Shown: positions 9,098 through 10,711 of the stretch, one piece after another
How positions within the stretch are numbered: the stretch's first letter is position 1
How the letters are laid out: each line of letters starts with the position of its first letter
Assembly: GCA_037447605.1 (NCBI GenBank)
Contig: CM074805.1
Span: 186,001 to 250,000 of the forward strand
Direction of reading: 5' to 3'
Source: Zygnema circumcarinatum SAG 698-1b
Taxonomy: Eukaryota; Plantae; Zygnematophyceae
DNA: 64,000 nucleotides
Made by a program: the position numbers and the translations under genes
Notes under the pieces: generated by a model
What the model was told of the DNA's origin: nothing
Database searches by the model: none
The model's input: only the letters and a program-made list of their open reading frames with translations

Positions 9098-10711
9098 CTA
9101 AAACGGGCATTGCTTAGATTCCTCAGTCTTTGCCCCTTTCCTTGCAGCGGCTGCCTCGAGGGCTACAAGAGACAAAAACTCATAGCCCGCTTGAGCTGCA
9201 GCATGGGCAGTTATCTGGCCATGGTCCAAGGCAGGGAGAACCTCTACGACGTCCCCTCCCACCCATGTGATCCCTGTGCAGGACCGGAGGTAGGCGAAGC
9301 CCTGGAACGTGCTGGGACCTCCCACTTCGGGAGTACCCGTGCCTGTAGAAATTAGGGAGAAAGTGAAAGGCATCAATCAATCGATACCGCGGTGGAGGCT
9401 TGGGAGAGATGGAAATAAACAGCAACAGAATGGTCGTCTTGATGCAGCAAGCATAAAATCCATGTTCTGACCACACGGCCAGGTCCCAGAACGACACGGA
9501 CAAAGGAAAGACTGAAAGGATGGCTTGCCAGGCATAGGCACGCCCTTATTCTGATAGGTCAGTGCTTGAATGAAGTTTGCATTTGCTTTCCTTCATCGGG
9601 GATTCAGGGTTCCTGGTTTGGGCACTAGGAACAGATCAGCATTCCATATTAATCTGTGTTAAAGGTGTTGTCACTGCCATATTCGCACAAACATACGCTT
9701 GCATTCGCTTGCATTCATCATCACCGTCTCTGTCATTAACAAATTCCAAGACTCACCCGGCGCAAATGCAGGGTCGAAGAAATCGACATCAAAAGACAGA
9801 AAAGCGCGCGTATTGCCCACGCGCCTCTGAACGATCGCTCCAAGCTCCGACGGCGTCAACGCCAGAAGTTCCGTCGTAGTGAGAACCTGAAACCCTAATT
9901 CCTTGGCCGCAGCAATATCGTCCGAACCATACACCGGGCCCCTCATGCCTATCTGGATAGAACGCTCAGGGAGCAAAAGGCCTTCCTCCACAGCCCTCCG
10001 GAACGGCGTTCCATGCGTGTATTTAAACCCGAAATATGAATCCCAAACATCCCCATGTGAATCAAAATGCACCAAAGCAAGGGGCCCGTGCACCGCCGCC
10101 AATGCGCGGAGCTCAGCCAATGTGATGGAATGATCTCCACCTAGACCCAAAGTGATGATTCCCTGCTTAGCCAGGGGCTCCAAGACACTTGTCATCCTCT
10201 CGTAGCTCGCCTCGATGAAGCCGGGAGCCACCGAGGCGTCGCCATAGTCCACGCAGGAGAGCACTCCCAGAGTGGTGATTCCAAGCTCGTGGTTGTGAGG
10301 GCGAAGAATGGCGGAGGCGCTGCGTATCGCTTCTGGCCCGAACCTCGCCCCCACTTTGAAGGTAGCGCCGGTGTCGAAGGGGAGCCCCACCACTGCAACG
10401 TCCACGCCAGACAGGTCGTCCACCTCCGCTTCCGGGAGGTGGGAATCGTCAGAGGTTTTAGGGCTTTTCGAGAATTTGGGAGAGAGGTAGGGGAGGCGTG
10501 CAAAGGTTCGGACGCCGGTGAACCGAGGCGAGAGGAGGGCGTCTGCCGGGAGATACTTTGCGCAGCCTCCATGGCCCTCGGGAGAGTACGCTCGCAGCTG
10601 CGGAGGAGAGGAAGGGGCAGGGATGGAGGAGGCGAGCGGCAGGAGGAGGAGGGAGACGAAGATGGCCACGTCGTAGCGCCATGTCGCAGCATGCGCGGCC
10701 GCCATGGCCAT
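9098..10711 (-). CDS. Agmatinase-like ureohydrolase (arginase family) with N-terminal signal-peptide-like segment; 2 exons (10711-9757, 9342-9098), ~399 aa
   Basis: Metal-binding motifs GGDHS, HFDSHGD and SFDVDFFDP, plus GLPFD, [22 protein letters not shown] and APG|TGTPEVGG. The last motif is split by one GT-AG intron (9343-9756) that rejoins in frame. Confidence 0.92.

What the first reader, a model, noticed from the sequence alone, without database searches (positions are those of the whole stretch)
9098..10711. Bacterial-type agmatinase-family enzyme with a signal peptide and a single intron: candidate horizontally acquired, secreted ureohydrolase
Seen: intact ureohydrolase metal ligands and only one intron, while neighbouring genes have many. 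About 45 extra N-terminal residues include a hydrophobic core (VAIFVSLLLLPLASS) followed by a Pro/Ser linker. Known: land plants make putrescine through agmatine iminohydrolase plus N-carbamoylputrescine amidohydrolase, and their arginases are mitochondrial. Inference: the start YLPADALLSPRFTGVRTFARLP and the block [31 protein letters not shown] recall Firmicutes/Actinobacteria-type SpeB sequences. That suggests a domesticated bacterial gene that now scavenges nitrogen from guanidino compounds outside the cytosol. The substrate cannot be read from sequence (agmatine, guanidinobutyrate, guanidine or another).
Basis: partly seen in the sequence, partly recalled or inferred. Interest (0 to 1): 0.72.

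Follow-up and report, generated by a model that had tools for sequence, protein, structure and literature searches.

The report
Alga enzyme gene borrowed from bacteria
This streptophyte alga expresses a correctly spliced gene for a urea-releasing (arginase-family) enzyme that early streptophyte algae took from bacteria and fitted with an export-type leader, probably to harvest nitrogen from arginine-like compounds outside the cytosol; no land-plant copy was found.

Summary
A minus-strand, two-exon gene (10711..9757, 9342..9098; 414-nt GT..AG intron) encodes a ~399-aa arginase-family ureohydrolase with all six metal ligands and both catalytic residues. Assembled contigs from two studies carry the predicted splice junction, and the transcript reaches 114 nt upstream of the start codon.

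- **Host:** it is a streptophyte alga, not a land plant.
- **Age of the gene:** it is not a private, recent acquisition. Orthologues occur in Klebsormidium, Coleochaete, Mesotaenium and four unnamed eukaryotic transcriptomes. They form one clade that branches in species-tree order, and all complete sequences have a hydrophobic N-terminal leader. The transfer was therefore ancient and the leader was added once.
- **Relatives:** the nearest are Chloroflexota and filamentous cyanobacteria (60-67% identity; up to 76% for Coleochaete), not Firmicutes or Actinobacteria. The nearest characterised enzymes are guanidinopropionase, guanidinobutyrase and proclavaminate amidinohydrolase, not SpeB agmatinase.

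A profile search of 5.8 billion protein clusters found no land-plant, chlorophyte, fungal or animal member. The donor is unresolved, so a cyanobacterial or plastid origin is not rejected. The substrate and the final location are inferred, not shown. I found no paper on this clade. It is a new variant of a known enzyme kind, of moderate interest.

The parts
9757..10711 (-). Exon 1 (318 codons + first base of Gly319): leader, linker and most of the ureohydrolase domain
   Evidence: ORF and translation; Pfam PF00491 4.5e-58; exon contigs in runs X1 and X2
10625..10711 (-). Signal-peptide-like leader, residues 1-29. The n-region has R12. The h-region VAIFVSLLLLPLA is 13 residues, too short for a membrane span. 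The c-region is A-S-S.
   Evidence: Hydropathy: best 11-residue window scores 2.75 at residue 15. All six homologues with a complete N-terminus have an equivalent hydrophobic N-terminus. Absent from bacterial homologues.
10562..10624 (-). Pro/Ser-rich linker, residues 30-50, holding the eukaryote-only motif [LI]RAY about 12 residues before the bacterial-homologous core
   Evidence: Alignment A2; N-terminal comparison
10418..10486 (-). Lineage-specific ~20-residue insertion (residues 76-98, Ser/Lys/Pro/acidic) between ARLPYL and the first beta-strand GVDVAVVG
   Evidence: Alignment A2: only this protein has it at full length; P0005 and P0006 have a shorter one
10301..10303 (-). Arg137 (ILRPHN). 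It aligns with GbuA Arg72 (MIRPYN), a residue from the neighbouring subunit that caps the active site. E. coli SpeB has Ala67/Trp68 in this loop.
   Evidence: phmmer alignments to 3nio and 7lol; role of R72/R105 from PMC9772407; role of Trp68 from PMC8125230
10013..10132 (-). Metal and catalytic motifs: GGDH(194)S; D217-S-H219-G-D221; Trp223 at the loop-A specificity position; catalytic His233 in [11 protein letters not shown]
   Evidence: these positions are invariant in alignment A2
9782..9790 (-). Metal ligands D308-V-D310 (SFDVDFFDP)
9343..9756 (-). Single intron, 414 nt, GT..AG, phase 1, 46% GC, splitting DPAFAPG|TGTPEVGG
   Evidence: A junction contig skipping 414 nt has depth 108 (X1) and 103 (X2), against 35 and 27 for the intron-bearing contig. 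The position is not shared with Klebsormidium.
9098..9342 (-). Exon 2 (80 codons + stop TAG 9100..9098): TGTPEVGG, the catalytic Glu in GGDVVEVLP, and the C-terminal tail. There is no KDEL/HDEL, PTS1 or hydrophobic anchor.
   Evidence: Pfam 6e-13; 75% identity to P0004 residues 309-382
10712..10825 (-). Minimum 5' leader seen in contigs, holding a 12-codon upstream ORF (ATG at 10765) that stops before the main ATG
   Evidence: The X2 contig spans 9756..10825; uORF found
8753..9097 (-). Minimum 3' UTR. The 591-nt contig ends at 9343 and runs past 8900; the 8753 end is computed from its length.
   Evidence: table 8, records 1 and 5

Best explanation
This is a functional nuclear gene of a streptophyte alga. 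It encodes a binuclear-metal ureohydrolase that cleaves urea from a guanidino compound.

Origin: the gene entered the streptophyte lineage from a bacterium, from a family now found mainly in Chloroflexota and filamentous cyanobacteria. This happened before Klebsormidiophyceae split from the Coleochaete/Zygnematophyceae line. It then gained about 50 N-terminal residues with an ER-type signal peptide, gained introns independently in different lineages, and was inherited vertically. No land-plant copy was detected.

Inferred mechanism: the precursor enters the secretory pathway and the leader is cleaved near residue 29. The mature enzyme then works outside the cytosol (apoplast/cell wall, vacuole or endomembrane lumen). 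There it releases urea plus an amine or omega-amino acid, so that nitrogen locked in guanidino compounds can be assimilated.

The substrate is more likely a guanidino acid (4-guanidinobutyrate, 3-guanidinopropionate or taurocyamine type) than agmatine.

Shown: gene structure, splicing, intact catalytic residues, phylogenetic placement, and conservation of the leader. Inferred: cleavage and destination of the leader, substrate, metal, and physiological role.
For: - **Expression and splicing:** contigs in runs X1 and X2, from two studies, hold the exact 414-nt splice. Exon depth exceeds intron depth, which exceeds intergenic depth.
- **Family:** PF00491 matches both exons, and all ligands are present.
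- **Closest solved enzymes:** GpuA 1.2e-51, PAH 2.2e-48 and GbuA 5.5e-48, against about 1e-30 for SpeB-type agmatinases and 8e-15 for plant arginase.
- **Eukaryote relatives:** only Mesotaenium, Coleochaete scutata, Klebsormidium nitens and four unnamed transcripts. These are followed directly by Chloroflexota and cyanobacteria at 57-68% identity over full-length matches. A profile built from the eukaryote sequences finds no further eukaryotes among the best 120 hits.
- **Named nearest genomes:** Crinalium, Leptolyngbya, Kaiparowitsia, Roseiflexus, Caldilineales and a Gemmatales at 60-67%. Identity then falls to about 50-55% (Deinococcus, Firmicutes, Dormibacterota) and then to 25-34%.
- **Tree:** the eight eukaryote rows form one clade (UFboot 91, SH-aLRT 70; SH-aLRT 96 in the quick tree). 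Klebsormidium is sister to the rest (89/85), and the window protein is sister to P0001 (97/95).
- **Leader:** bacterial proteins start at MPRYQP. All six homologues with a complete N-terminus, and the window protein, have a hydrophobic N-terminus followed by small residues, plus a shared [LI]RAY motif.
- **Eukaryotic setting:** the intron, the multi-exon PNGase and MFS_5 neighbours, and GC3 within the local range.
- **Substrate clue:** Arg137 aligns with GbuA Arg72, the proposed binder of the acid head group. The [12 protein letters not shown] block is shared with GpuA and GbuA, whereas agmatinases have HGTMFY.
- **Catabolic context in bacterial relatives:** NitT/TauT-type or PotD-type ABC importers lie next to the gene in cyanobacteria and Chloroflexota. 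A class-III aminotransferase overlaps its 3' end in Deinococcus. No arginine decarboxylase or spermidine synthase recurs.
Against: - No signal-peptide predictor and no localisation data were available. The h-regions of some orthologues (18-21 uncharged residues) could act as signal anchors.
- No conserved N-glycosylation sequon, new disulfide pair or retention/sorting signal marks adaptation to the secretory pathway.
- Ureohydrolases usually prefer alkaline pH, whereas the apoplast and vacuole are acidic (general knowledge).
- The loop-A position that is Asn in GbuA, GpuA, PAH and arginase is Trp223 in this whole clade, which is aromatic like Tyr155 of SpeB. The guanidino-acid assignment is therefore not clean.
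- Eukaryote monophyly is supported but not starred in the careful tree (91/70). The outgroup branch is very long.
- A sister relation to cyanobacteria is not rejected (AU p 0.31).
- Four eukaryote sequences come from unnamed organisms, so a land-plant source for some of them is not excluded.
- The runs are only guessed to be RNA.
Confidence: 0.68

Rival explanations
1. Endosymbiotic gene transfer. The gene came from the cyanobacterial ancestor of the plastid, was retargeted to the secretory pathway, and was later lost from glaucophytes, red algae, chlorophytes and land plants.
For: Cyanobacteria are among the closest relatives. Forcing eukaryotes plus cyanobacteria into one clade costs only 0.37 lnL units (AU p 0.31).
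Against: The eukaryotes do not nest inside cyanobacteria; the cyanobacterial rows form their own group in 93% of bootstrap trees. The cyanobacterial holders found in the genome scan are mostly filamentous Leptolyngbya-like or Oculatellaceae-type lineages, not a broad sample of the phylum. No other Archaeplastida lineage appears among the best hits of two searches, so many independent losses would be needed. The product carries a signal peptide, not a transit peptide.
Confidence: 0.2
2. It is a true agmatinase (SpeB equivalent) that makes putrescine from agmatine for polyamine synthesis, as the database names ('agmatinase') say.
For: The best NCBIfam models are agmatinase PRK02190 and TIGR01230. 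Sources name the Klebsormidium and bacterial proteins 'agmatinase'. Trp223 at the loop-A position is aromatic, like SpeB Tyr155.
Against: Both agmatinase models score below their curated cut-offs even when the two exon scores are added (190+61 against 302; 132+34 against 174). SpeB-type structures are about 20 orders of magnitude weaker than GpuA, GbuA and PAH. The Trp68 loop position holds Arg, as in GbuA. Human 'AGMAT', with the same kind of annotation, hydrolyses guanidino acids and not agmatine (PMC9772407). A signal peptide is odd for a polyamine-biosynthesis step. Bacterial relatives sit beside importers, not speA or speE.
Confidence: 0.15
3. The N-terminal extension is not a cleaved secretion signal. 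It is instead a signal anchor or an organellar (mitochondrial or plastid) targeting sequence, so the enzyme acts inside an organelle or on a membrane, as mitochondrial AGMAT and plant arginases do.
For: Other eukaryotic ureohydrolases are mitochondrial (PMC9772407). Some orthologues have 18-21 uncharged residues, which is long enough to span a membrane. No predictor was run.
Against: The window protein's h-region is only 13 residues, is Leu-rich, contains Pro, and is flanked by Asp14 and an A-S-S/Pro-rich c-region, which is the signal-peptide pattern. The leaders have few Arg and no amphipathic or hydroxylated transit-peptide character. The n-h-c pattern with small residues at -3/-1 recurs in the window protein and the six homologues with a complete N-terminus.
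Confidence: 0.15
4. Artefact: bacterial contamination in the assembly, or a decaying pseudogene.
For: There is high identity to bacterial proteins and only one intron.
Against: A spliceosomal GT..AG intron interrupts the catalytic motif and is removed in transcripts. Eukaryotic multi-exon neighbours lie on the same contig. The ORF and all catalytic residues are intact. Orthologues exist in three named algae.
Confidence: 0.01

Closest known systems
Pseudomonas aeruginosa guanidinopropionase GpuA (PDB 3nip) and guanidinobutyrase GbuA (PDB 3nio); human AGMAT/GDAH
   Same: Same ureohydrolase fold family and the best solved matches (1e-51 and 5e-48). The metal and catalytic residues are identical. 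The ...RP(Y/H)N loop carries the Arg equivalent to GbuA R72 / AGMAT R105, and the HGT(P/T)FRRA(V/I)EE block is shared.
   Different: Identity is only roughly 45-50% over the domain. Loop-A Asn is replaced by Trp223. The protein carries an N-terminal signal-peptide-like leader, whereas GbuA and GpuA are cytoplasmic and AGMAT is mitochondrial. Activity is untested.
Uncharacterised 'agmatinase' family of Chloroflexota (Roseiflexus, Caldilineales) and filamentous cyanobacteria (Leptolyngbya, Kaiparowitsia, Crinalium)
   Same: 60-67% identical to the window protein and up to 76% to the Coleochaete orthologue. All diagnostic motifs are shared, including DxWDxYFG and ILRP(Y/H)N. This is the family from which the algal gene derives.
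   Different: The bacterial proteins have no leader; they start at MPRYQP. They have no introns and often sit beside ABC importers.
Streptomyces clavuligerus proclavaminate amidinohydrolase (PDB 1gq6)
   Same: Second-best solved match, 2e-48, with the alignment reaching back to residue 76.
   Different: PAH acts in clavulanic-acid biosynthesis on a beta-lactam guanidino acid. It lacks the RP(Y/H)N Arg, having ...IHGVG there.
E. coli SpeB agmatinase (PDB 7lol) and plant arginases ARGAH1/2 (PDB 6vsu)
   Same: Same superfamily and the same metal ligands.
   Different: Much more distant (4e-30 and 8e-15). SpeB uses Trp68 and Tyr155 to hold the agmatine amine. Plant arginases are mitochondrial. The NCBIfam agmatinase cut-offs are not reached.
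Synechocystis Sll1077 GdmH, the Ni-dependent guanidine hydrolase (PDB 7esr/7oi1)
   Same: It is a ureohydrolase. That its gene neighbours a NitT/TauT-type ABC importer is my recollection of the literature, not something tested here.
   Different: It is a weaker match (3e-28). No guanidine riboswitch was found in 12 related bacterial loci. Ni accessory genes were not looked for.

Membership tests
Arginase/ureohydrolase superfamily (Pfam PF00491) | Profile match above the gathering score across the whole domain | tested here: met
   Exon 1 scores 197 bits (profile positions 2-220) and exon 2 scores 49 bits (positions 221-277), against a cut-off of 22
Arginase/ureohydrolase superfamily (Pfam PF00491) | Six binuclear-metal ligands (GGDH, DxHxD, DxD) plus the catalytic His and Glu | tested here: met
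   H194, D217, H219, D221, D308, D310 and H233 are present in exon 1. The Glu of the VVEV motif is present in exon 2.
Arginase/ureohydrolase superfamily (Pfam PF00491) | Urea-releasing hydrolysis of a guanidino substrate | not testable with these tools
   Needs an enzyme assay
SpeB agmatinase (NCBIfam TIGR01230 equivalog / PRK02190) | Score at or above the curated whole-protein cut-off | tested here: not met
   TIGR01230: 131.9 + 33.9 bits against 174.3. PRK02190: 189.7 + 60.6 bits against 302. The exons were scored apart and the sums are still below the cut-offs.
SpeB agmatinase (NCBIfam TIGR01230 equivalog / PRK02190) | Aromatic Trp68-type residue in the alpha2-eta2 loop that holds the agmatine amine (PMC8125230) | tested here: not met
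   The loop reads ILRPHN with Arg137 where SpeB has A67/W68. The alignment has a one-residue gap here, so equivalence is good to within about one residue.
GbuA/GpuA/AGMAT-type guanidino-acid hydrolases | Arg from the neighbouring subunit capping the active site (GbuA R72 / AGMAT R105) | tested here: met
   Ungapped alignment places window R137 on GbuA R72 (MIRPYN against ILRPHN). The residue is invariant in all eight eukaryote rows.
GbuA/GpuA/AGMAT-type guanidino-acid hydrolases | Rest of the substrate pocket as in GbuA (for example loop-A Asn) | tested here: not met
   Loop A has Trp223 (DVWDSYFG) where GbuA, GpuA and PAH have Asn. The full 10-residue pocket list was not available to me.
GbuA/GpuA/AGMAT-type guanidino-acid hydrolases | Groups with characterised members in a tree | not tested
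   The characterised sequences had no reference usable in my tree. Only PDB E-values were compared.
Horizontally acquired bacterial gene in a eukaryote | The closest relatives are bacterial, and other eukaryotes lack close homologues | tested here: met
   seven streptophyte-type proteins, then only bacteria; no fungal, animal, chlorophyte or land-plant hit among the best 120
Horizontally acquired bacterial gene in a eukaryote | Genuinely integrated: spliceosomal intron, eukaryotic flanks, expression | tested here: met
Horizontally acquired bacterial gene in a eukaryote | Identified donor lineage, excluding plastid (EGT) origin | tested here: inconclusive
   The tree gives a polytomy among Chloroflexota, Cyanobacteria and Gemmatales. 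The AU test does not reject eukaryotes plus cyanobacteria as one clade (p 0.31).
Sec/ER-type cleavable signal peptide | n-region, 7-15-residue hydrophobic h-region, and polar c-region with small residues at -3/-1 | tested here: met
   By inspection and hydropathy only: R12; a 13-residue h-region with a KD mean of 2.75; A-S-S. The same architecture occurs in P0001-P0005 and P0089.
Sec/ER-type cleavable signal peptide | Call by a trained predictor, or experimental cleavage and secretion | not testable with these tools
   No SignalP/TargetP or proteomics was available

The most novel reading that the evidence does not exclude
Early streptophyte algae captured a bacterial guanidino-compound hydrolase from Chloroflexota or cyanobacteria and turned it into an extracytosolic (secreted or vacuolar) enzyme by adding a signal-peptide exon. 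This exon is still separate in Klebsormidium. The result would be a nitrogen-scavenging route not described in green plants: extracellular arginine is oxidised to 2-ketoarginine, which converts to 4-guanidinobutyrate, which the enzyme splits into urea and GABA. The substrate could instead be guanidine or another guanidino acid. The clade's own pocket (Arg137 plus Trp223) would specify a substrate different from those of GbuA, GpuA and SpeB, and the route was later discarded by land plants.
Probability: 0.25. Interest if true: 0.62.

Novelty: new variant of a known kind. Interest (0 to 1): 0.45.

Why it matters
Green plants are thought to handle guanidino nitrogen only through mitochondrial arginase and the AIH/CPA agmatine route. 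This gene suggests that the algal relatives of land plants also hold a bacterial-derived ureohydrolase directed into the secretory pathway, a location I have not seen described for this enzyme family (from memory; not searched).

It adds a well-defined case to the list of ancient bacterial gene transfers into streptophytes. It is also a clean example of how a transferred gene acquires a targeting leader: the leader is a separate exon in Klebsormidium and is fused to the core here. Finally, it points to an uncharacterised bacterial enzyme clade, currently auto-named 'agmatinase', whose substrate is probably something else.

Its apparent loss in land plants limits its reach, so the interest is moderate.

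Tried and rejected
- **Plant arginase kinship:** rejected. ARGAH1 scores 8e-15 against 1e-51 for GpuA.
- **Firmicutes/Actinobacteria SpeB origin:** rejected. The nearest genomes are Chloroflexota and Cyanobacteria; Firmicutes MAGs reach only 53-54% and sit on a separate long branch.
- **Recent, private transfer:** rejected. Orthologues occur in three named algal classes, and composition is ameliorated.
- **Shared intron position as a marker of common descent:** not found. The Klebsormidium introns lie elsewhere.
- **Guanidine riboswitch in the bacterial loci:** none in 12 loci at gathering thresholds.
- **Polyamine operon context in bacteria:** no speA or speE recurs.
- **Naming the organisms behind P0001, P0005 and P0006:** the sample accessions SRR8128902-07, ERR12684111 and ERR2041114 were found in no paper.
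- **Literature on agmatinase with Klebsormidium, streptophyte, charophyte or HGT terms, and the Zygnema genome-paper supplements:** nothing relevant.
- **Runs X6 and X7 (same species label):** they hold none of the gene. This is not evidence of silence.
- **Not run:** the large representative search, because its 50% clusters would merge the algal and bacterial sequences and it carries no names. Structure prediction was also not run, because the family is clear from sequence and the joined protein could not be submitted.
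Full report
**1. What is in the sequence**

On the minus strand an ORF starts at ATG 10711 and runs to a GTGAGT donor at 9756. After a 414-nt intron (9756..9343, acceptor CTACAG) the frame continues from 9342 to the stop TAG at 9100..9098. The junction is phase 1 and rebuilds the family motif DPAFAPG|TGTPEVGG.

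Pfam PF00491 (arginase family) matches exon 1 at 4.5e-58 over profile positions 2-220. It matches exon 2 at 6e-13 over positions 221-277, so the two exons abut in the profile. All six metal ligands are present (H194; D217, H219, D221; D308, D310). So are the catalytic His233 and the Glu of the VVEV motif in exon 2.

**2. Expression**

Contigs of two runs from two different studies (X1, X2) each hold a 58-nt piece that joins 9342 to 9757. This skips exactly the 414 nt, with CT..AC ends on the plus strand.
- The junction piece has depth 108 (X1) and 103 (X2).
- The intron-bearing contig has depth 35 and 27.
- The exon contigs have depth 73-194.
- Beyond 10825, depth in X2 falls to 5-13 (X1 has no contig there).

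The X2 exon-1 contig reaches 10825, which is 114 nt upstream of the ATG, so the leader-coding part is in the transcript. The 3' contig runs to about 8753.

The runs are only guessed to be RNA, but this depth pattern together with a spliced form is what RNA gives. About a quarter of the signal retains the intron. There is no internal Met before residue 173, so every product carries the leader. A 12-codon upstream ORF lies in the 5' leader.

**3. Setting**

The gene sits between a multi-exon PNGase gene (Transglut_core at 4610-5053, PAW at 5857-6738) and, further on, a multi-exon MFS_5 transporter gene. Its GC3 (0.67 and 0.58) lies within the range of those neighbours (0.48-0.81), and the intron is 46% GC. 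It is an integrated nuclear gene, not contamination. Earlier notes of this scan call the genome a streptophyte alga. I did not identify the organism myself, but the orthologues I found agree.

**4. Relatives**

A word search with exon 1 gave Mesotaenium endlicherianum (68%), Coleochaete scutata (70%), Klebsormidium nitens (61%) and four unnamed eukaryote-type transcripts first. Directly after them came Chloroflexota and filamentous cyanobacteria at 57-68% identity over full-length matches.

A profile built from the eight eukaryote sequences recovered exactly the same seven database proteins on top and then only bacteria. No land plant, chlorophyte, fungus or animal was among the best 120, all of which scored E below 1e-148.

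A scan of one genome per bacterial species named the nearest holders:
- Crinalium, Leptolyngbya, Kaiparowitsia, Chroococcidiopsis, Roseiflexus, Caldilineales, Chloroflexales and one Gemmatales, mostly at 60-67%.
- Deinococcus at 55%, Firmicutes MAGs at 53-54% and Dormibacterota at 48-51%.
- Then a jump down to 25-34%.

**5. Tree**

I built an IQ-TREE (LG+C20) tree of 69 rows, using exon 1 only for the window protein.
- The eight eukaryote rows form one clade (UFboot 91, SH-aLRT 70; SH-aLRT 96 in the quick tree).
- Klebsormidium is sister to the rest (89/85), which is the species-tree order.
- The window protein is sister to P0001 (97/95).
- Among bacteria the clade sits in an unresolved polytomy with several Chloroflexota groups, a cyanobacterial group (88/78, excluding the eukaryotes in 93% of bootstrap trees) and the Gemmatales sequence.

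Forcing eukaryotes plus cyanobacteria together costs only 0.37 lnL units (AU p 0.31). A bacterial origin with a single entry is therefore well supported, but the donor is not resolved. A plastid (EGT) origin is less parsimonious, given the absence from all other Archaeplastida in the searches, but it is not rejected.

**6. The leader**

Bacterial homologues begin at MPRYQP, which aligns with window residues ~50-56. The window protein has 50 extra residues:
- an n-region with R12;
- a 13-residue Leu-rich h-region (hydropathy 2.75), too short for a membrane span;
- A-S-S;
- a Pro/Ser linker.

The six homologues with a complete N-terminus all have the same n-h-c pattern, followed by small residues. 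All eight sequences share a motif [LI]RAY (degenerate in Klebsormidium and P0003, RAH in P0006) about 12 residues before the core.

In Klebsormidium the first intron lies at residue 62 (YQ|P), which is where homology to the bacterial N-terminus begins. There, the leader plus linker is its own exon. In the window gene the leader and core are fused in one exon.

The C-termini carry no consistent retention signal. Klebsormidium ends in KEEL and P0001 in WEL, while the window protein ends in QCPF. No trained predictor was available, so entry into the secretory pathway is a strong inference and the final destination is open.

**7. Substrate**

The NCBIfam agmatinase models stay below their curated cut-offs even when the exon scores are summed. 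The closest solved enzymes are GpuA, PAH and GbuA.

Clues for a guanidino acid:
- Window Arg137 (ILRPHN) aligns without gaps to GbuA Arg72 (MIRPYN).
- In GbuA and human AGMAT this Arg reaches from the neighbouring subunit over the active site. It is proposed to bind the acidic head group of guanidino acids (PMC9772407).
- In E. coli SpeB the same loop has Trp68, which holds the agmatine amine by a cation-pi contact (PMC8125230).
- The [12 protein letters not shown] block is also of the GpuA/GbuA type.

Clue against a simple assignment:
- Loop A has Trp223 where GbuA, GpuA and PAH have Asn and SpeB has Tyr155. The pocket is therefore the clade's own.

Bacterial relatives sit beside importers. 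These are NitT/TauT-type ABC systems in cyanobacteria L005, L008 and L013 and in Chloroflexota L028 and L031, and a PotD-type system in L027. In Deinococcus a class-III aminotransferase overlaps the gene's 3' end. No speA or speE context recurs, and no riboswitch was found. This fits catabolism of an imported guanidino compound.

One known source of such a compound is the arginine oxidase route. It runs from arginine to 2-ketoarginine, then to 4-guanidinobutyrate (non-enzymatically with H2O2), which a guanidinobutyrase splits into urea and 4-aminobutyrate (PMC2242806). I rate a guanidino acid as the most likely substrate class (about 45%), agmatine at about 15%, and something else for the remainder.

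**8. Verdict**

Its interpretation is right in the main (bacterial-type, leader-bearing, not a plant arginase, substrate open). It needs correction on the host, the age of the transfer and the donor group.

I found no paper describing this clade. The Klebsormidium protein is already in databases, auto-named 'agmatinase'. I class the finding as a new variant of a known enzyme kind: a streptophyte-algal, secretory-pathway ureohydrolase of bacterial origin.

Noticed in passing
L001:3001-6117 (Klebsormidium nitens DF236985.1): The orthologue has five exons. Its first intron falls at residue 62 (YQ|P), where homology to the bacterial N-terminus begins, so the signal peptide plus linker is a separate exon there. 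None of its introns matches the window gene's single intron.
   Followed up: partly
window 10727-10765 (minus strand): A 12-codon upstream ORF (ATG at 10765) lies in the 5' leader and ends 15 nt before the main ATG.
   Followed up: no
window 9343-9756: An intron-retaining contig is present at about a quarter to a third of the depth of the spliced junction in both runs. The retained form would end after 28 extra codons and would lack the catalytic Glu.
   Followed up: no
window 10418-10486 (minus strand): A ~20-residue Ser/Lys/Pro/acidic insertion lies before the first beta-strand and is unique to this protein among the eight eukaryote sequences. It is probably a surface loop.
   Followed up: no
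window 10562-10624 and alignment A2 columns ~120-130: A eukaryote-only motif xx[LI]RAY follows the leader in all orthologues. From memory it resembles NPIR-type N-terminal vacuolar sorting determinants of plants. This is untested.
   Followed up: no
L005:6999-8905, L008:7014-9966: In two cyanobacterial loci the ureohydrolase is followed on the same strand by a metallo-beta-lactamase-fold gene and an NMT1/TauT-type substrate-binding protein. L008 also has an isochorismatase-family gene. This may be an uncharacterised catabolic cluster.
   Followed up: partly
L033:5992-8228 (Deinococcus xinjiangensis): A class-III (omega-amino acid type) aminotransferase gene overlaps the stop of the ureohydrolase gene. 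This suggests coupled use of the amine or amino-acid product.
   Followed up: no
window 3000-8200 (+), 14800-17400 (+), 20900-22700 (+): The neighbours are a multi-exon PNGase (Transglut_core and PAW hits), a gene whose exon pieces look to me like a PP2A B55-type WD40 subunit (no Pfham... no Pfam hit at 1e-3), and an MFS_5 transporter. CT/GA-rich low-complexity tracts at 4100-5100 give spurious ORFs on both strands.
   Followed up: partly
window 7798-7807 and 63742-63751: There are two 10-N assembly gaps. The first lies inside a GGN/Gly-rich repeat.
   Followed up: no
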